A program made the position numbers and the translations under genes. 64,000 bases of DNA, taken from the NCBI GenBank assembly GCA_965644495.1, contig CBFFSA010000001.1:2976001-3040000 (forward strand), in the 5' to 3' direction. Every line of letters starts with the position of its first letter. Position 1 is the stretch's first letter. Below, piece by piece: positions 2,594 to 61,348 of the stretch. The notes below the pieces were generated by a model. It saw only the letters and a list, made by a program, of their open reading frames with translations, was not told the DNA's origin and did no database searches. Source of the DNA: Perkinsela sp. CCAP 1560/9. Lineage: Eukaryota; Protista; Euglenozoa: Kinetoplastea.

Positions 2594-4053
2594 TGGATTA
2601 TCACATCCAGTGCACCAAGTTATCACATCCAGTGCACCAAAAGTTTTTAGATTATCATATCCAGTGCACCAAAAGTATATTTTTACAATTTCAATTTACA
2701 TATTCAACTTACTTAGATATTCAATTTAGACATTTCTATTACTCGATTTTTTTCCTTCCTTCGTCATGATAAAGAATACGGCTCAGTGAAGGAGAGAGGC
2801 GCACTATACAAGAGATGTTCGAGGCGGGAGCTACGCGACGTGAGATCGGCCCGACTATCGGAAAATCACATAGCACCGTTAGCCGTGAGTTGGCCCGAAA
2901 CAAAAAACGGAGTCGGCGGTACGAAGCCAGCCGTGCTCAGAGAGCATCCAAGAGACGCTTGGAAAGCAAGCCGGTGCGCCCTCGCATGATCTCTGGGCCC
3001 GTGGAGCGCCACATCAAGAAGCTCTTAGGGCAGCTTCACAGTCCAGAACAGGTTGCCAACACTTTAGTTGCTGGGGCGCAAGCTTCGCCGTCTGTGGCTA
3101 CTATTTGTCGCCACGTGGCACGTGATAAGCACGTAGGTGGGAAACTGTACAAATCTCTTCGGATTCGTGGTCGGCGCCCTTATAGGCGTCGATCCAACCG
3201 CGGCAGATCAACGATCCCCAACAGAGTCCCCACCCGACTTCGCCCTCAGATAGTCAACAAGAGGCGTCGGTATGGGGATTGGGAAGCAGACCTCGTGGAA
3301 CGGCATAATCACTCAGGATACATTTTGACCTTGTGTGAGCGGAAGAGCCGATTCCTCGTTCTGCGTGTTCTACGATCGAAGCATGCCGAAGAAGTGGCGA
3401 ATCAAATCATCAAGGGATTAAGAAAGTACAAAACTTTTACTATCACTTATGACAATGGAACGGAATTTACAAAGCATGAAAGATTGAATGAAAAGCTGGG
3501 CTGTAAATCCTTTTTCTGTGTCCCGTATCACTCGTGGGAAAAGGGGACGGTGGAAATTTCAAATGGTTTTATTCGCCAATATCACAAGGCGAGTGAGTCG
3601 TTTGAGACACTGAGCCTCAAAGAGGTGAACAAGACAGCCAAGAAGTTAAACAAACGGCCCAGAAAGGTTTTGCGGTGGGAATGTCCCAAGAATTTTGAAA
3701 GTCTACTCACCAAGACTTGACGTGTGAAGTTTTGTAAGCGCAATAAAGGGTGTTATTGTAAATAAGTAGAAAGTGTATTTCCGGTAGATCTAAATAAAAC
3801 AATACTGTTGTATTCCTCACCAAGACTCATTACATTGGGTTTTCTAGACCTTTTCGGCAAAAACAAATTGGGGGGCAAAAGGCTCCATTGAAAAATATAC
3901 CAATCATTGTATCATCGTACTAGGTTCATTTTTTTAAATATTCTTGGTGCACTGGATATGAGAAAATGTTTGACACCTGGAACGGGATGTAATTTTCGCG
4001 TTTTTGGTGCACTGGATATGCGAAAATGTTGGTGCACTGGATATGATAATTCA
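2594..4053 (+). mobile_element. IS30-family DNA transposon, 1460 bp, 2-bp GG target duplication
   Basis: Terminal inverted repeats are TGGATTATCACATCCAGTGCACCAA and TTGGTGCACTGGATATGATAATTCA. GG flanks both ends (2592-93, 4054-55). The core ATCCAGTGCACCAA occurs three times at each end. Confidence 0.9.
2815..3720 (+). CDS. IS30-family DDE transposase
   Basis: HTH REIGPTIGKSHSTVSRELARN, SPEQVA, and catalytic motifs GDWEADLV, TITYDNGTEF and PYHSWEKGTVE.SNGFIRQY, plus LNKRPRKVL. All are IS30 hallmarks. Confidence 0.92.
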   Translation: MFEAGATRREIGPTIGKSHSTVSRELARNKKRSRRYEASRAQRASKRRLESKPVRPRMISGPVERHIKKLLGQLHSPEQVANTLVAGAQASPSVATICRHVARDKHVGGKLYKSLRIRGRRPYRRRSNRGRSTIPNRVPTRLRPQIVNKRRRYGDWEADLVERHNHSGYILTLCERKSRFLVLRVLRSKHAEEVANQIIKGLRKYKTFTITYDNGTEFTKHERLNEKLGCKSFFCVPYHSWEKGTVEISNGFIRQYHKASESFETLSLKEVNKTAKKLNKRPRKVLRWECPKNFESLLTKT

Positions 4054-8022: not shown

Positions 8023-8607
8023 CCGTAGACCCCCCCAGTAACAGAGATTTGGCCATTTTTGGGCTGACCCCCAGTAACAGAGATTTGGCCCGGGAGGGTG
8101 GTTGGAGGGGGGAGGGGGTGTTTGGGTGGGTGGGGGTCGCTGGGCTGGGTGAGGGTGGTTGCGCGGGAGCGAAGTAGTTGCAGGGTTGTCTGGGCAGAAA
8201 ATTAATGCACACATGAACAAAAAAAGTGTTTTCCCACTAAAAAAGCATACCCCCCCAGTAACAGAGATTTGGCTGTTTGGGTCCAAAATAGATTCTATTA
8301 CTGGGGTATACGGTAGAATCGATTATGGACCAAAATGACCAAATCCTTGTTACTGGGCGGTATACTTTTTGGGTAGGAAAAGGCCTTTTTTGTTCATAAG
8401 TGCGTTGCTTTTTTGTCCAACCAACCCCACAACTACGCCATTCGCTCCCGCGCATCTACCCTCACCCCGTGCAGCAATCCCCACCCGCCCAAACACCCCC
8501 TCCCCTCTCCAACCACCCTCCCGAGACAAATCCTTGTTACTGGGGGTCAGCCGAAAAAGGGTAAAATCCTTGTTACTGGGGGAGTCCATTACTGGGGGGG
8601 TCTGCAG
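8023..8607. mobile_element. Two diverged ~290-bp MITE copies in inverted arrangement (8023-8313 and ~8325-8607)
   Basis: Copy 1 is TA|CCGTAGACCCCCCCAGTAA...TTACTGGGGTATACGG|TA with internal repeats CCCAGTAACAGAGATTTGG. Copy 2 is the reverse-complement homolog ending GGGTCTGCAG|TA. Confidence 0.75.
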
Positions 8608-44218: not shown

Positions 44219-44516
44219 TACATAAAAGACAGCAACGTAGACTTCAAATAGCAACAAAATCGTTTTTATTTTTAATTTTTAGGGGGCGGGGGTGCCACTA
44301 TATTTCGTATGAGAGGGGATGCACTGACGCGCCTGTAAGACTAGCTCTTCTTCCTTCTTCCTTCCCATGTCCCATCAAAAATTGAAACTATTTCATAATT
44401 AGTCCTGGATATAAACGTTGTAGCTTTTAAATTCGCACATTTATTACGATGACCTTTTCATGAAATGTATCTAAAAAGGAAGAAAAATTATATATATTCT
44501 ATCGGTAATTTCATCG

Positions 44517-44601
44517 GTATCTCGTCGCAGACAGGTACAGATGAATTGTCACAGGATTGAAGTTTAAAACTTCAAGTCAAAGTCTGCGTTTTAAGCGACT
44601 C
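44517..44601 (-). ncRNA. Single-hairpin H/ACA-like (AGA box) snoRNA; further copies start at 44842, 45167, 45493, 46492, 49126 and 49594
   Basis: Minus-strand hairpin CGCAGAC...TTGTC-TTGAAGT/ACTTCAA-GACAA...GTCTGCG followed by AGA plus 3 nt. It is conserved in 7 copies while the flanks diverge. Confidence 0.65.
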
Positions 44602-44654
44602 AGAACAATGTAATTGTTTAAATATGGAATTCTAACCCCTGATTCTAACCAACA

Positions 44655-44732
44655 TGTTCAGGTCAAAGCGCATTAGTAGAAAAGTATTCATGCAAATCAT
44701 ACAAGGCTGAAACAAAGGTATCATCACGTTAG
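44655..44732 (-). ncRNA. C/D box snoRNA; further copies at 44980-45057, 45305-45382, 46200-46277 (D box TTGA) and 48853-48930
   Basis: Box C GTGATGA, D' ATGA, box D CTGA. The D' guide GTTTCAGCCTTG is complementary to conserved SSU CAAGGCUGAAAC, and the +5 rule selects the first G of AAGG (yeast Gm1126 equivalent). Confidence 0.85.
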
Positions 44733-45608
44733 AAAAATACTCCCCTTGGCACGAACCAAACTGAAATTCGCGAGTAAACAGTGCTGGATAAAAACAATGT
44801 AACCTTAAATTGGAACATTCATTACGATGACCTTTTCATCCGTATCTCGTCGCAGACAGGTACAGATGAATTGTCACAGGATTGAAGTTTAAAACTTCAA
44901 GACAAAGTCTGCGTTTTAAGCGACTCAGAACAATGTAATTGTTTAAATATGGAATTCTAACCCCTGATTCTAACCAACATGTTCAGGTCAAAGCGCATTA
45001 GTAGAAAAGTATTCATGCAAATCATACAAGGCTGAAACAAAGGTATCATCACGTTAGAAAAATACTCCCCTTGGCACGAACCAAACTGAAATTCGCGAGT
45101 AAACAGTGCTGGATAAAAACAATGTAACCTTAAATTGGAACATTCATTACGATGACCTTTTCATCCGTATCTCGTCGCAGACAGGTACAGATGAATTGTC
45201 ACAGGATTGAAGTTTAAAACTTCAAGACAAAGTCTGCGTTTTAAGCGACTCAGAACAATGTAATTGTTTAAATATGGAATTCTAACCCCTGATTCTAACC
45301 AACATGTTCAGGTCAAAGCGCATTAGTAGAAAAGTATTCATGCAAATCATACAAGGCTGAAACAAAAGTATCATCACGTTAGAAAAATACCCCCCTTGGC
45401 ACGAACCAAACTGAAATTCGCGAATAAACAGTGCTGGATAAAAACAATGTAACCTTTAAATTGGAACATTCATTACGATGACCTTTTCATCCGTATCTCG
45501 TCGCAGACAGGTACAGATGCATTGCCACAGGATTGAAGTTTAAAACTTCAAGACAAAGTCTGCGTTTTAAGCGACTCAGAACAATGCAACTGTGTAAATA
45601 TTGTTTTG

Positions 45609-46168
45609 TCATGCATTCATAGTGCAGAGATAAGCCCCACAGTGTCCTTAGCCGCATACGACAGGTGGATCAAGTGGGGGTTCGTCCTCGCCGGAGGGGT
45701 ACGGGTGCGGAGAGCTGACGTCCCAGGTGCAGAGAGCTCGGTTGTCATGTGCAGGTGCAGAGAGCCGGATGCGCAATACCCATATTACAGTTTCGGGGGC
45801 AATACGGGTACAGAGAGCTGCGACAGAGCCGAGGTGCGGAGAGCTGGGTGACCGCCAGGTGCAGAGAGCCGGGAGGCTCGTGGGCGGAGGACACGTCTAG
45901 TGGTCCTCAAGGGAGGCCACCGTGACGCATTGCCTCCTCGGAAAGGCAGGCACGGGAGAAAGAGAAGCCGAGAGAGGGAAGCACACTCACTCCAGGGGGT
46001 GAGTCGGGAAGGGGTGAAGGGGTGGAAGCGCGTGCCCTGCTTCAACAATATAGAGGGACAGTTTCAGGTTTAGTGCCGGCCGGCAAAGGGCATAGAAATA
46101 CAGTATGCCCGTTGCCGGGGAAAGAAAGGATGAACTAAGGAAAAAGTACCAACAAGGTCCAAAAACTG
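45609..46168. other. GC-rich highly structured non-coding element, copy 1 (unknown family)
   Basis: Six GTRCRGAGAG repeats with mutually complementary spacers, and several further hairpins. Shares three motifs with 58258-58620. Confidence 0.7.
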
Positions 46169-47103
46169 TATTGGAATTCTAATCCTTGTGCAATCAACAT
46201 GTTCAAGTCAAAGCGCATTAGTAGAAAAGTATTCATGCAAATCATACAAGGCTGAAACAAAAGTATCATCACGTTAGACAAATATCCCCCTTAGCAGGAA
46301 CCTACTATGCACTACTACTATACCAATACACTACTGCATGGGGAAAAAGAAATTGCAGAACGATTCAATGAAAACTATTCTACATTTCGCGCTAAATCGT
46401 GAGGAACAAGAAACTCGCGAGTGAAAGTAGTGCTGGATAAAAACAATGTAGCTTTTAAATTCGCACATTCATTACGATGACCTTTTCATCGCTATCTCGT
46501 CGCAGACAGGTACAGATGCATTGTCACAGGATTGAAGTTTAAACTTCAAGACAAAGTCTGTGTTTTAAGCGACTCAGAACAATGCAACTGTGTAAATAAT
46601 TTTTATTGAGGGAGATACCACTCCCTCGCTATCCTCTGGCCCGAAATTTCGCCTCGACAAAAACATTTCCGGAAAAAAAATCGCTAAGAATCAAAGGCAA
46701 CACCACAAATACCAATAATTTGCACCAGTGAGAAACCCCTTCTCCGGATGTTGGCGATACTAGGCTCGGAGGGTAACGTAAAGAAATATGAGTTTCAAAC
46801 CCAGCCCCTTGGAATGAGAATCCCTCGGCAAGGTGTCTCTCGTGTGTTCTCGATCAAAACGAAACTCAGTTATTGTATGTGAAGCCGGGTTTTGCTTATT
46901 ATGATATTTCTTCATGTGTGTTCCGATATCGCTTAGTGATTGTTTTCAATAGCATGTTGGGTTAAGCCTGAAAGCTCCCCTGGTAGAAACTTGAGCTTTA
47001 TGATACGGTCGGCTTTTTTCTATGCTTATCAGGCAGGTTCTCGGGATATGCAACATGTTCGCTCCAAGTGGAGATACCATAAGGAAGATCACGATAATTG
47101 TCA

Positions 47104-47290
47104 TCAATAAGCTTTAAAGGGACTTTCATAAGATCTAGGGGATGGACCGGCCACGTCGCCAGTGCAATTAAATCGTTCCACCCAGAGTTTCACAGTTCCC
47201 TCGTGGACACCAAAATTTTGGGCAGTCCGGGAATAAGACTCTGTTTTCTCAAAGTCCGCCACAAGAAGCATCATGTGACTTTCCATAATC
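47104..47290 (-). pseudogene. Transposase N-terminal HTH remnant (IS630/Tc1/pogo-like)
   Basis: SYSRTAQNFGVHEGTVKLWVERFNCTGDV matches a transposase HTH pattern; no downstream DDE is visible. Confidence 0.4.
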
Positions 47291-48616
47291 TTCCCTGGTG
47301 AGGCATAAAACACCACGGGAAGCCCTTGAACGAACTCGCTTTTGAGGCATGAAACGGGGAAAAAACAAAAAATTGCCATATTTTCACAGGAAAAAAATAC
47401 TCTTTTTGTCATCAGGTTAAATCTTTCAAGTCAAGCGTTCCGAATACGCCAAAGACATACAACCCTGCGAGAGCTCTCCAATGCGCTATTATTTCAAAAA
47501 ATTGAGCAAATTTTACAAATTTTAGACCCCCCTAGATGGAAGTTTTCACCCCTGTATGGAATGTATATGCAACATAAGGCGTTGTTCAGGAAAATAAGAA
47601 TCGAACATCTTCCTTTTATTCAGCACCTACCAGACAATATCTTAACAAAGGGGGTAAATTTGCTTCCTTTATTGCTCCGGAAAAGATTACCTCTCCAATG
47701 CAATAAATAGAACAGATAAAAAATCTTAGGTGATTAGTTAAGCTTAACCCGGGTCCAATGCTTATAACTGAGTTTCATTTTGCTCGAGAACACTTGAAAG
47801 ACACTAGCATCCGAAATTTTCTGATTGGGCACGTAAGGATCCCGCTTTGTAATGTTTTCAAAAATAAAAACATTGAAACATTTTATATGAGTTTACCTGA
47901 TTTTGGTGCAGCCTCTTGCTACAAAAGAACAAGATTACTTTTGACTTATATTATCTTGTTCTTCTATGCCTACACCGAGAGCTTTGAGAAACACTACACC
48001 CGACTCAGTCTAAACCTCAAACGAAGCTCTTTTGTCTAAAACTGGTAACGAGTGCTTCATAAATGAGGGCAACGTCATGAAATGCACCATATGCGATACT
48101 GAAGTTCATTCGAGAAGACTACCAGAACATTTAACTTCAAAAAGGCATGTGAAAAATACTACACCCGACCCTCCTCAAACTTTAAGCGAAACTAAGAGAG
48201 ACATTATGGAAGAAGATGTTTCATGCAACGAAGAACTGGTAGATGAAAAATCAAATTATGAAGTTTCTGACCAATCAGAGAAAGATCCCAGGGAAGTCGT
48301 CAGGATATTTTTAAAAGATTCACCTTTTTTCACTCGCGACTGGAGAAACATTATTCAACTCTGCGCAAGTAAAATAAAATCAGGTTGCATTCGCAAATAT
48401 AAAGAGCGTTACGATAGCCTTGGCAGTTTTGCTTGTGGAGCCTGCGGAATATTACAGGAATCAACTGCTGCACTAAATCGTATTGACTTGTCCGAATGAT
48501 CAGTACTTCAAGAGGAGAAAAATCCTGTAATGAGCCACATCGATATTAGCGTAAGACACATGCCCCTTGTAAATGAATCGTACTATCACGTAAACAATAA
48601 CCTTTTGGAACACCAA

Positions 48617-48787
48617 GGTAATGTGGACGAGGGAGATACCAATAGTGTAGGTGCGGCAGTTTTCCACAGGACAAACGGCATCTCTACCTTTTTAGGCGTC
48701 TGTCTTCAATTCCATAAGGGAAATGCCGTTTTTCCTGCGGGAAACTGCCGCACCTACACTATTGGTATCTCCCTCGTCCACTTTACC
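48617..48787. mobile_element. 171-bp foldback/MITE with ~47-bp TIRs starting GGTAA
   Basis: GGTAATGTGGACGAGGGAGATACCAATAGTGTAGGTGCGGCAGTTTCC ... GGAAACTGCCGCACCTACACTATTGGTATCTCCCTCGTCCACTTTACC. Confidence 0.75.
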
Positions 48788-49756
48788 CAGGGTTGGATAT
48801 TTTTTAGAAATACGGAAGTCTGCACGGAATTCTAATCCTTGTGTAACCAACATGTTCAGGTCAAAGCGCATTAGTAGAAAAGTATTCATGCAAATCATAC
48901 AAGGCTGAAACAAAGGTATCATCACGTTAGAAAAAGAGATTCCTTTAGCACGAACCAATGAACTACTACTGTACTAATACACAAAGAGAGTTTGCAGAAC
49001 GATTCAATGAAAACTATTCTACATTTCGCATTACATAATGAGGAACACGAGACTCGCGAGTGAAAGTAGGATATAAACAATGTAGCTTTTAAATTCGCAC
49101 ATTCATTACGATGATTTTTTCATCAGTATCTCGTCGCAGACAGGTACAGATGCATTGTCACAGGATTGAATTTTAAACTTCAAGACAAAGTCTGCGTTTT
49201 AAGCGACTCGCAACAGTATAAAGATTGAATAACCATCACTTTCATTGATTATTTATTCGAGCTAATAGTTCTATCCGATTATTTCAAGATCGTGGGAATT
49301 CGACTAAGAATGGACCCTCCTCAGTCGGGTGGTAACGATCCTGCTTGAGCACCAAATATGTTCAGCACCAACTAAGTATGTTATGAAAGCTCTTGAAGAG
49401 CAAAAAACAAAGTCATAAATATATGATATTTTATAATTTTCATAATCTCTCTTCAGAACCTTTGACTTGCCATTTAAAGAACCCAAGAAGAGATAGAGTA
49501 GACAATGAGGAAGACGAAACATGTGAGAGAAAAATACGCAGAATAAAAACGAAGCTACTCATACATTTTCACATTTCGATTACCTTTTCATCGGTATCTC
49601 GTCGCAGACAGGTACAGATACATTGTCACAGGATTGAAGTTTAAAACTTCAAGACAAAGTCTGCGTTTTAAGCGACTCGCAACCGTGCAAAGATGGAATT
49701 CTACCCCTCGAATAACCATCACTTCTATTGATTACCTGTACACCGAACACACCCTC

Positions 49757-58085: not shown

Positions 58086-58964
58086 TCAACCTCTCCACGC
58101 TACAAAATCTCTGCGCGGATAAACGCCTTCATTTCGAAGATTTGTATCGTTCGTTAAAGTGACATTGGTATTCATAAAATTGAAGCTCAATGTAGGTAAA
58201 AAACTTGAAATGTCGACAATTCCGCAAAGACTTGGATTGAAAGCCACAAGGTTATGATCATACGCTCGTGGCGCAGAGATACGTCTCTCTGTGTGACGGC
58301 CGATACCATCAGCGCATGACCCGCATACGACGGGTGTCACACAGAGAGTGGAGTGCGAGGTAGGAGACGAGTCGCCCATCGGTCATGCTACAGCACGTAT
58401 AGCCATGGTTCATGCTGCAACACGGTCAAGCCGTGGGTTCATGCTGTCAGATGGTCTATCGTGGATCATGATGCATCATGGGGAGGTCCGTTACCGCCGC
58501 ACTCGCTACAGCATGTAGGGAGAGAGGGGTGCAAGTTCGCATCCCCTATACACGCATACAACGTGTCCCGCTGTAGCACGCCCAGTGGTCCTCAAGGGAG
58601 TCCTCAAGAGTGGTCCTCAAACGTCAAAATTCACTTCTCCCGTAAATTTGGCATCGAAAACAGAAAAGTCTTCTACAGTTTTTGGAAGGAACTCAAAATT
58701 TAGCTTTCCACCTATGTTCAAAAGATCCCAATTAACTGAGGAAATTTCTGACCGTTCATTGCATGTTACGCCTTGCCAAGTACACACGGATACTATTTTG
58801 ACACGCCCTAACAAACCCCTTCGTTTCGTAGTTTTCCACGATTTCATTTTGTGTCGTACATTTTCAGTAAAGCGTTCCATCATTTGTTCCTGAGGCAGAA
58901 GGGCCATAGATACCTTTCCACGCCGCAGATCACGACCGTCATCGACACAGTATAAGTTTAGCAT
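58086..58964 (-). pseudogene. Leucine-rich-repeat family gene interrupted by a structured insertion
   Basis: QEQMME.F, CTWQGVTCN...I..VNW...GGKLNFEFLPKTVEDFSVFDAKFTGEVNF resembles the expanded LRR family recalled from Perkinsela. The same frame resumes after the insert (HNLVAFN.SLCGIVDISSFLPTL). Confidence 0.6.
58258..58620. other. GC-rich highly structured non-coding element, copy 2
   Basis: 13-bp perfect stem 58285-97/58336-48, four GG(W)TCATGMT repeats with complementary spacers, and motifs shared with 45609-45915. Confidence 0.7.
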
Positions 58965-59608: not shown

Positions 59609-61348
59609 CAGTGGTTTCAGTTGATCTTGCCCCCCCCCTCGGAATTTTGATTTTTTTTATCCATTTTTGCTCATCTTTGCAGCATTGGAGAGATCTCGTT
59701 CCCCTAGCGAAGAGCTTTGCCGCCTTTTTTTCATAGAGACCCTCTGGTGCCCCCTGGGTCCGAAAAACACTGTTTTTTTGGACGTTTTCTGTGTACACAA
59801 CCATTTTTTGTCACATTTTCCCTATTTTTTGTACATTTTGAACATGTAAGTACGAGTAATAGTGTTCTAAATTGATAATTTGAAAGCTCTATGTCTAGTA
59901 CCATCCCTATCGCCTAATTTAATATAGTCAACACCTCTACATTATGCAGACCAGACCCTCTAACCCCAAACAGGGGGAGTACGTACAAGGATGGAATGAC
60001 AAAAGAGAAGACAATCCCCCAATATCCCACAAAGGAACCGTGGCATTACCTCTTTGCGAGAGAAAAGAAATAATAAAGCAACACAAAAAGGGATTAAGCA
60101 TACATAAATTATCTAATAATTTCGGACGTGACCGTCGCACCATAAGAAGAATTGTTAACCTGTGGAAGGAAGGAGAAGATCTTACACCCCAAAAATCCCC
60201 AGGAAAAAAATCATCAAGGCGGTTTAAGGACCTTGTAAAAAAAATTGTGGATGATGAAAACGAAACGTACGATGGTTGCTTAACTTATACTTGGATACAC
60301 GAGCAAGTGCTGAATATGGGGTATAAATGTTCGTTAAATAAAATAAGAACTATTTTGAAAAATATTGATTACGGTAGATGGGCTAAGTCGCCGAACTGTG
60401 ACCTAACTGAGGAACACAAGTCGCAACGTTTGAGATTAGCAAACGAATTGCTTACATGGCCTAAAGAAGATTTAAACAAAATCATTTGGACCGATGAAAA
60501 GTTGTTTACCTGTGGGGTTCATGGGTCTCAGTTTTTCATTGGACCTAAAGGGTGCCAAAGAAAACCTCGCTGCAGAAACCGTAGGTGGTATGGGGGGAAG
60601 GGGGTAATGGCTTGGATGGGTATTAGTGTAGAACACGGATTTTTCTTGCACGTGTTTGAACCCAATGACAATACAACTTATGAAAACGCGCACAAGGTCA
60701 CTGGGGGAGTGATCCTTGACTCCTTTCAGAAGCCTAATGGGTTTTTACATTATCTCAAAGACCACGTTGACAATGTGACTGTGCAAATGGATAATGCTAC
60801 CACCCATAACTTGGCAAAAGGTGAATTGATTAAATATCGTACTAAACAATTGTCTTGGCCAGCGAATTCGCCTGATTTAAATCCAATAGAAAATGTTTGG
60901 AAACAAATGAACGGTATCATAAAGAAAAAAATTAAGCCCCACAATCATGCTACCCTCGCCGATGCCATTAAAAAAGCTTTTCAGATTCTAAAACGTCCTC
61001 AAGAAAAACGTAAAGTGTGCAACACAATTGATTCAGTCCCTAATAGACTTCAAAAAGTGTTGCAAAACAATGGAGGCCATTCCGGATACTAGTTCTTTTC
61101 CTTTAGAGTTAACTTTTGGACATAAAATCCGTTTTTCGTTCTATTTTTGATATGGTAAAAAAATATCATTTTTTATTATTTTGGTCAACTTTCGGGTCAC
61201 CCAAGGGGCACCAGGGGGTCTCTATGAAAAAAAGGCGGCAAAGCTCTTCGCTAGGGGAACGAGATCTCTCCAATGCTGCAAAGATGAGCAAAAATGGATA
61301 AAAAAAATCAAAATTCCGAGGGGGGGGCAAGATCAACTGAAACCACTG
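59609..61348 (+). mobile_element. Full-length Tc1-like transposon, 1740 bp, ~150-bp near-perfect TIRs, TA target duplication
   Basis: TA|CAGTGGTTTCAGTTGATCTTGCCCC ... GGGGCAAGATCAACTGAAACCACTG|TA, enclosing an intact transposase. Confidence 0.95.
59944..61092 (+). CDS. Tc1-family transposase (DD32E)
   Basis: N-terminal HTH, IIWTDEK, VMAWMGIS, QMDNATTH, WPANSPDLNPIENVW and NNGGHSGY*. Confidence 0.93.
   Translation: MQTRPSNPKQGEYVQGWNDKREDNPPISHKGTVALPLCERKEIIKQHKKGLSIHKLSNNFGRDRRTIRRIVNLWKEGEDLTPQKSPGKKSSRRFKDLVKKIVDDENETYDGCLTYTWIHEQVLNMGYKCSLNKIRTILKNIDYGRWAKSPNCDLTEEHKSQRLRLANELLTWPKEDLNKIIWTDEKLFTCGVHGSQFFIGPKGCQRKPRCRNRRWYGGKGVMAWMGISVEHGFFLHVFEPNDNTTYENAHKVTGGVILDSFQKPNGFLHYLKDHVDNVTVQMDNATTHNLAKGELIKYRTKQLSWPANSPDLNPIENVWKQMNGIIKKKIKPHNHATLADAIKKAFQILKRPQEKRKVCNTIDSVPNRLQKVLQNNGGHSGY

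What the first reader, a model, noticed from the sequence alone, without database searches (positions are those of the whole stretch)
45609..46168. Unknown structured element whose long arm is built from direct-repeat motifs that face each other as symmetric internal loops
Seen: six direct repeats of GTRCRGAGAG start at 45705, 45727, 45755, 45808, 45834 and 45859. Their spacers are mutually complementary: CTGACGTCCCAG with CTGGGTGACCGCCAG, and CTCGGTTGTC..GCAG with CTGCGACAGAGCCGAG. The arm is closed by GTCCTCGCC (45684) and GGCGGAGGAC (45883). On folding, motif 1 faces 6, 2 faces 5 and 3 faces 4, giving three near-identical two-fold symmetric loops around a mostly self-complementary TGCA core. 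More hairpins follow to ~46118. The block is GC-rich, sits inside an AT-rich snoRNA array and is bracketed by TATTG (45599, 46169). Inference: plain tandem or inverted duplication does not give direct motifs with inverted spacers, so the pattern suggests selection on a single-stranded fold such as an array of binding sites for a dimeric protein. I could not match it to any RNA or transposon family I know.
Basis: partly seen in the sequence, partly recalled or inferred. Interest (0 to 1): 0.9.

Follow-up and report, generated by a model that had tools for sequence, protein, structure and literature searches.

The report
Spliced-leader-headed SINE with repeated-loop arm
This is one decaying copy of a short non-coding jumping element (about 60 copies) in a kinetoplastid protist; it starts with the cell's own spliced leader, shares its 3' end with R2-like retrotransposons that probably copy it, and carries a folded arm with six internal copies of half of that shared 3' signal, whose purpose is untested.

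Summary
The six motifs and complementary spacers are real. The element is one copy of a dispersed ~575-nt family (about 62 copies) in a Perkinsela-like genome, and it reads on the MINUS strand: a 5'-truncated spliced-leader (SL) exon, a structured body, then a 3' hairpin (AUCUC-stem-UGA) and short A-rich tail. Six R2-like (RT + zinc knuckle + restriction-like endonuclease) lineages end in the same hairpin, so this is a SINE-like passenger. Some copies join the exon at other body positions, as trans-splicing would. TATTG is not a target-site duplication. In the RNA the loops are pyrimidine-rich (CUCUCYGCAC), and they match 9 nt of the shared 3' signal; a sister family repeats the other half instead. 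The arm is more conserved than the rest of the element and has two compensatory pairs, but is only marginally stable, and the window copy's + strand folds worse than shuffles. I propose, without direct evidence, that the loops are extra binding sites for the retrotransposon protein. No Rfam match or ribozyme found; no expression data. The scan already noted the SL-headed SINE/R2-like system elsewhere in this genome; the arm and its link to the 3' signal are what this finding adds.

The parts
45601..46171 (-). Whole SINE-like retroposon copy (family A), inserted in the spacer between two snoRNAs, same sense as the snoRNAs and neighbouring genes
   Evidence: 88% identity over full length to dispersed copies; ends from alignment; empty site in other array units
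46150..46171 (-). 5' head: last 22 nt of the 38-nt spliced-leader exon, two mismatches
   Evidence: SL RNA gene unit in L060 with exon followed by the GTATGAG intron start; 533 exon relics in the genome
46135..46149 (-). Pyrimidine tract ending in AG: internal splice acceptor used by some copies
   Evidence: five copies in two subfamilies have the exon joined directly after this AG
46080..46118 (-). Long hairpin of the 5' scaffold shared by sister families A, B and C
   Evidence: one C-G to A-U double change
45893..46079 (-). Rest of the shared 5' scaffold: four further helices
   Evidence: cross-family alignment; one-sided changes keep G-U pairs on the minus strand
45684..45892 (-). Family-specific arm: rod with three two-fold symmetric internal loops
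45705..45714 (-). Loop motif 1 (faces motif 6); reads CUCUCCGCAC in the RNA
45727..45736 (-). Loop motif 2 (faces motif 5)
45755..45764 (-). Loop motif 3 (faces motif 4)
45808..45817 (-). Loop motif 4; the GTAC variant is private to this copy
45834..45843 (-). Loop motif 5
45859..45868 (-). Loop motif 6
45609..45631 (-). 3' terminal hairpin AUCUC-stem-UGA shared with R2-like retrotransposons; damaged by two private changes in this copy
45601..45608 (-). Short A-rich 3' tail
45308..45377 (-). Context: box C/D snoRNA of the 325-bp array, two 12-nt guides to SSU rRNA
45493..45582 (-). Context: hairpin followed by an AGA box, probable H/ACA-like snoRNA (target not tested)
   Evidence: read from sequence
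58250..58620 (-). 5'-truncated copy of sister family C: same 3' hairpin, arm with repeated CAUGA

Best explanation
A non-autonomous retroposon (SINE-like) mobilised by R2-like retrotransposons. Shown: dispersed copies, SL head, shared 3' hairpin, no TSD, folded body. Inferred cycle: a copy lying in a polycistronic unit is transcribed by read-through; trans-splicing adds a fresh SL exon at the end of the old one (or at a nearby acceptor), which gives a defined capped 5' end without an internal promoter or ribozyme; the R2-like protein binds the 3' hairpin and copies the RNA into a new site by target-primed reverse transcription, usually losing about 10 nt of the leader. The arm is a family-specific insert built from six copies of the 5' half of that 3' signal and held as a rod by compensatory change. 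Its most likely role is to add low-affinity contacts for the R2-like protein so that the passenger RNA competes with the LINE's own RNA (about 35%); this last step is inference only.
For: About 62 copies on 20+ contigs; fixed 3' end, variably truncated SL head of 9-36 nt; SL gene found; exon joined at six different body positions, five copies right after a pyrimidine tract plus AG; TG is a common acceptor in Perkinsela (PMC5601477). Partner L056: RVT_1, best PDB hits R2 proteins, C-terminal CCHC and PD..E motif, ends 70 nt before the same hairpin, three copies share that end. Five more lineages, 42-75% identical where measured, end in AUCUC-stem-UGA with different stems. LINE 3' ends fused directly to SL-headed SINEs and SINE-SINE head-to-tail fusions, as template jumps give (PMC3414825). 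No TSD of 7 nt or more in 35 of 36 copies. Arm: variants shared by 3+ copies in 11/164 columns against 75/319 outside, Fisher p 2e-6; double changes at two adjacent pairs. Motif shares 9 nt with the 3' hairpin, chance about 1e-4; family C repeats CAUGA, the other half, 4-5 times.
Against: No expression, processing or binding data. The loops lack the 3' UGA side of the signal, so they are half-sites at best. Motif columns are not significantly more conserved than the spacers between them (p 1.0; 0.27 without position 6). Families B and C spread without this motif. The rod is marginally stable. Within the arm alone G-U versus A-C counts do not pick a strand (23 vs 20 cells), and the tolerated change at motif position 6 gives a C-A mismatch in the RNA if the UGCA core pairs. 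Low divergence of the arm could come from recent exchange between subfamilies. Copies are related, so the p-values overstate independence.
Confidence: 0.88

Rival explanations
1. Same SINE, but the CU-rich loops bind a host pyrimidine-tract protein (PTB-like DRBD3/DRBD4), which masks internal acceptors and protects the RNA from being cut short by trans-splicing or coupled polyadenylation.
For: Loops read CUCUCY in the RNA. DRBD3 binds UUCCCCUCU and tethered DRBD3/4 repress trans-splicing in T. brucei (PMC9639853). No full-length copy examined has the exon joined inside the arm.
Against: Does not explain the invariant GCAC half or the 9-nt match to the 3' signal; my extraction required bodies over 300 nt, so internal junctions were not fairly sampled; presence of the proteins here not tested.
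Confidence: 0.25
2. Same SINE, but the motifs are a by-product: reverse-transcriptase slippage or template jumps copied part of the 3' end into the body, and selection acts only on a compact, nuclease-resistant fold, not on the loop sequence.
For: Duplicated and inverted fragments of element ends occur at junctions; motif no more conserved than spacers; each sister family has a different middle.
Against: Six copies kept nearly identical while spacers diverged from one another; only position 6 toggles, and at least one intact copy remains per loop in 65 of 66 cases.
Confidence: 0.3
3. The element descends from the SL RNA gene itself (exon plus GU donor), acting as a long SL-like donor RNA or its retrocopy.
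For: Exon is followed by GTA in the main form; a 468-nt SL intron was reported for Perkinsela (PMC5601477 supplement).
Against: The true SL gene here is a 297-bp unit whose intron matches the element for only 3 nt; no copy keeps the full 38-nt exon; autonomous LINEs carry the same head followed by unrelated sequence.
Confidence: 0.07
4. The fold is selected on the plus strand (cDNA or antisense RNA with purine-rich loops), or is a ribozyme.
For: The plus strand folds at lower absolute energy and tolerates the position-6 change as G-U.
Against: Whole-element G-U cells outnumber A-C 124 to 54 on the minus strand; cross-family one-sided changes are G-U on minus; no Rfam hit, no hammerhead or HDV core in a simple scan.
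Confidence: 0.05

Closest known systems
R2 SIDEs and R2/R1 hybrid SIDEs of Drosophila (PMC3414825)
   Same: Short non-coding passenger of a restriction-like-endonuclease LINE; a 5' processing module plus the partner's 3' end; template jumps seen.
   Different: The 5' end comes from SL trans-splicing, not an HDV-like ribozyme; only about 23 nt are shared with the LINE; the body is not a deletion derivative; insertion is dispersed, not in rDNA.
Trypanosomatid RIME, NARTc, SIDER (ingi/L1Tc clade; PMC8190864, PMC4035085, PMC3820030)
   Same: About 0.5-kb non-autonomous retroposons of kinetoplastids.
   Different: No Pr77 signature or HDV ribozyme found, no 12-bp TSD, no poly(A); the partner is R2-like, not ingi.
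Classical SINEs with small-RNA heads (tRNA, 7SL, 5S, snRNA) and LINE-derived 3' tails
   Same: Composite head-body-tail design with a LINE-shared 3' stem-loop.
   Different: Head is a truncated SL exon that cannot act as an internal Pol III promoter; no tRNA, 5S or 7SL match.
Scattered SL fragments of Perkinsela sp. (PMC5601477, Supplementary Note 1.3)
   Same: More than 500 SL-like fragments, some next to retrotransposons, ascribed to reverse transcription.
   Different: That paper describes decayed SL genes and ingi-type neighbours; it does not describe an SL-headed SINE family, its structure or an R2-like partner.
SLACS/CZAR/CRE elements (from my own knowledge)
   Same: Restriction-like-endonuclease LINEs associated with SL sequence.
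   Different: They insert into SL genes with long TSDs; here the exon is the element's own 5' end at dispersed sites.

Membership tests
Non-autonomous non-LTR retroposon (SINE-like) | Dispersed, short, non-coding copies with a fixed 3' end and variable 5' truncation | tested here: met
Non-autonomous non-LTR retroposon (SINE-like) | 3' terminal sequence shared with an RT-encoding partner | tested here: met
Non-autonomous non-LTR retroposon (SINE-like) | Mobilisation by that partner protein | not testable with these tools
   indirect only: LINE-SINE fusions
SINE in the strict sense | Pol III head derived from tRNA, 7SL or 5S | tested here: not met
   no Rfam match at gathering or E<=1 beyond chance; head is SL exon
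R2 SIDE | 5' HDV-like ribozyme | tested here: inconclusive
   no Rfam hit; my descriptor scan found none but had no positive control
R2 SIDE | Internal-deletion derivative inserted at the rDNA site | tested here: not met
   body has no match to the partner loci held; insertions dispersed
RIME/NARTc/SIDER | About 12-bp TSD and poly(A) tail | tested here: not met
   one 14-bp TSD in 36 copies; short A-rich tail only
RIME/NARTc/SIDER | 77-79 nt Pr77 signature at the 5' end | tested here: inconclusive
   5' end is the SL exon; no reference Pr77 sequence was available to align
SL RNA gene | Full exon followed by the SL intron | tested here: not met
MITE or solo LTR | Terminal inverted repeats or TG..CA ends with TSD | tested here: not met
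R2-like (RLE) LINE, for the partner | Single ORF with RT, CCHC knuckle and PD-(D/E)xK endonuclease | tested here: met
   knuckle and nuclease motif read by eye; exact clade (HERO, NeSL, R2) not tested

The most novel reading that the evidence does not exclude
A promoter-less SINE that renews its 5' end by trans-splicing has multiplied half of its partner's 3' recognition signal into three two-fold symmetric loops that bind extra copies of the R2-like protein, with a sister family multiplying the complementary half: a passenger RNA that competes for the retrotransposon protein by avidity.
Probability: 0.3. Interest if true: 0.75.

Novelty: new variant of a known kind. Interest (0 to 1): 0.55.

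Why it matters
It explains part of the hundreds of SL fragments reported in Perkinsela and shows how a SINE can do without a promoter or ribozyme in a polycistronic genome. The 3' signal is only about 23 nt and keeps its flanks across R2-like lineages as distant as 42% identity, which makes it a compact natural system for asking what an R2-type protein recognises. If the loops bind the protein, it would be a way for a passenger RNA to overcome a LINE's preference for its own RNA that I could not find described.

Tried and rejected
Rfam at gathering on the window and at E<=1 on family A, B, C loci: nothing on the element. Hammerhead and HDV descriptor scans on both strands: none; no positive control. 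Resemblances recalled from memory to kink-turns, loop E, the U6 ACAGAGA box and group II intron domains V/VI all lie on the plus strand and were dropped once the RNA proved to be the minus strand. Tyrosine-recombinase element L088 first looked like the partner, but shares only the SL exon. TATTG as TSD rejected. The arm pattern is absent from JGI metagenomes and IMG/VR. A whole-arm duplex shuffle test was weak (z about -2). Orientation against flanking ORFs was mostly unclear (14 sense, 4 antisense, 18 unclear). Paper searches found no description of an SL-headed SINE.

Full report
Observation. The six 10-nt motifs are at the stated positions and far above chance (6 against 0.23 expected). The facing spacers are complementary in register at both ends, and their summed pairing energy beats shuffled spacers (window copy z -2.7; typical copy L004 z -3.9). 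But the stretch 45670-45900 does not fold better than shuffles on either strand (z +1.88 on plus, -0.76 on minus), and forcing the rod costs about 4 kcal/mol on plus and 11 on minus. There is no Rfam match.

It is a dispersed family. The genome holds at least 40 near-full-length relatives at 83-90% identity and about 62 copies of an arm-specific 22-mer. The genome is kinetoplastid-like: intron-poor, strand-polarised genes, a kinetoplastid-type SSU (L042) and an amoebozoan-type SSU (L041) in the same assembly. I read this as a Perkinsela-like endosymbiont; that is inference from sequence, not a database assignment. The window copy is decaying: it has private changes in the leader, the long hairpin, motif 4 and the terminal hairpin.

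It reads on the minus strand. One end, present 533 times in the genome, is the reverse complement of the spliced-leader exon: the SL RNA gene is a 297-bp unit in L060 with a 38-nt exon followed by the trypanosome-type intron start. Copies keep 9-36 nt of the exon, most often 28, never all 38. The exon joins the body at six different positions; in five copies from two subfamilies it joins right after a pyrimidine tract ending in AG. A junction always at the exon's exact 3' end is what trans-splicing produces. In Perkinsela TG serves as acceptor 26% of the time (PMC5601477), so re-splicing at the end of the old exon would regenerate the main form; this step is inferred. The host array is also on the minus strand: a box C/D snoRNA with two 12-nt guides to the SSU rRNA. 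Across families A, B and C, one-sided changes in the shared 5' helices keep G-U pairs on the minus strand, and G-U cells outnumber A-C 124 to 54 in family A.

The partner. The other end is a hairpin, AUCUC-stem-UGA, present about 145 times. The same hairpin lies 70 nt after the stop of an RT ORF in L056 whose best solved relatives are R2 proteins and which ends in a CCHC knuckle and a PD..E nuclease motif; three copies share that end. A second lineage in this genome and four in ENA assembly ERZ24900291, 42-75% identical to L056, end in the same flanks around different stems, and each of those four has an SL relic upstream of its ORF. LINE 3' ends are fused directly to SL-headed SINEs in L082 and L091, and SINEs to SINEs in L003, L006 and L019, as template jumps by R2-type enzymes give (PMC3414825). 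TSDs are absent in nearly all copies. At the window site the empty array units show that at most one base is duplicated, so TATTG is not a TSD. R2 of Bombyx recognises a small core of its 3' UTR (PMC10499050), which fits a small conserved terminal signal.

The arm. In the RNA the motif is CUCUCYGCAC. Across 39 copies, variants shared by three or more copies occur in 11 of 164 inner-arm columns against 75 of 319 outside (p 2e-6). Two adjacent pairs of the spacer 1/5 helix change on both sides (G-C to A-U with a G-U intermediate; C-G to G-C and A-U). Ensemble probabilities support the middle loop (0.5-0.9) and one side of the inner loop in intact copies, the outer loop poorly. Only motif position 6 toggles, and each loop keeps at least one U version in 65 of 66 cases. 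The motif is not significantly more conserved than the spacers. The outer and central spacers are near-palindromic, so tandem duplication of a motif-plus-palindrome unit followed by compensatory change is a sufficient origin. The new point is that the motif matches nine bases of the 5' side of the LINE-shared hairpin (chance about 1e-4), and that family C, with the same scaffold, repeats CAUGA, the 3' side, four to five times in its own arm.

Mechanism. Shown: copy number, strand, SL head, alternative junctions, shared 3' hairpin, lack of TSD, conserved and partly covarying arm. Inferred: read-through transcription, re-trans-splicing, target-primed copying by the R2-like protein (together about 88%). 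For the loops I commit to extra binding sites for that protein (about 35%), against a by-product of template jumps kept only for a compact fold (30%), a host PTB-like binder (25%; PMC9639853) and others (10%).

Known relatives and novelty. It works like an R2 SIDE or a SINE but fails the strict membership tests for each (no Pol III head, not a deletion derivative, no TSD). Scattered SL fragments were reported in Perkinsela (PMC5601477) without this family. I found no paper on an SL-headed SINE, within a library that lacks most subscription journals. Earlier notes of this scan already describe the SL-headed SINE and its R2-like partner on other DNA of this genome; I had reached that reading before the look-up and tested it here. 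Verdict: a real, new variant of a known kind; the symmetric-loop arm is the unusual part and its function is untested. Interest 0.55.

Noticed in passing
window 2815-3720 (+): ORF that looks by eye like a bacterial IS30-family transposase, inside a eukaryotic contig.
   Followed up: no
window 8028-8586: Long imperfect palindrome, MITE-like; similar sequence interrupts SINE copy L032.
   Followed up: no
window 44400-49710 (-): snoRNA array: box C/D RNA with two 12-nt guides to SSU rRNA plus an AGA-box hairpin; not in Rfam. The unit just right of the insertion has an altered box D.
   Followed up: partly
window 58250-58620 (-): Truncated sister SINE (family C) whose arm repeats CAUGA.
   Followed up: partly
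L060 1400-2340: SL RNA gene in a 297-bp tandem unit with a divergent tRNA-like box A/B element upstream (not called by ARAGORN) and a 5S rRNA gene about 400 bp away; suggests a Pol III-type arrangement.
   Followed up: partly
L088 189-4544: gag / tyrosine recombinase / RT-RNase H element (VIPER/TATE-like by eye; no Pfam hit) directly after an SL relic; many relics are preceded by poly(A).
   Followed up: partly
window 59609-61348: Tc1/mariner-like ORF with long terminal inverted repeats.
   Followed up: no
L085 1500-1560: An inverted fragment of the 3' hairpin joined to the SL head of a LINE, like a twin-priming or template-switch product.
   Followed up: no
L092 9790-9920 and after 14690: An R2-like lineage flanked on both sides by (GT)n microsatellite.
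   Followed up: no
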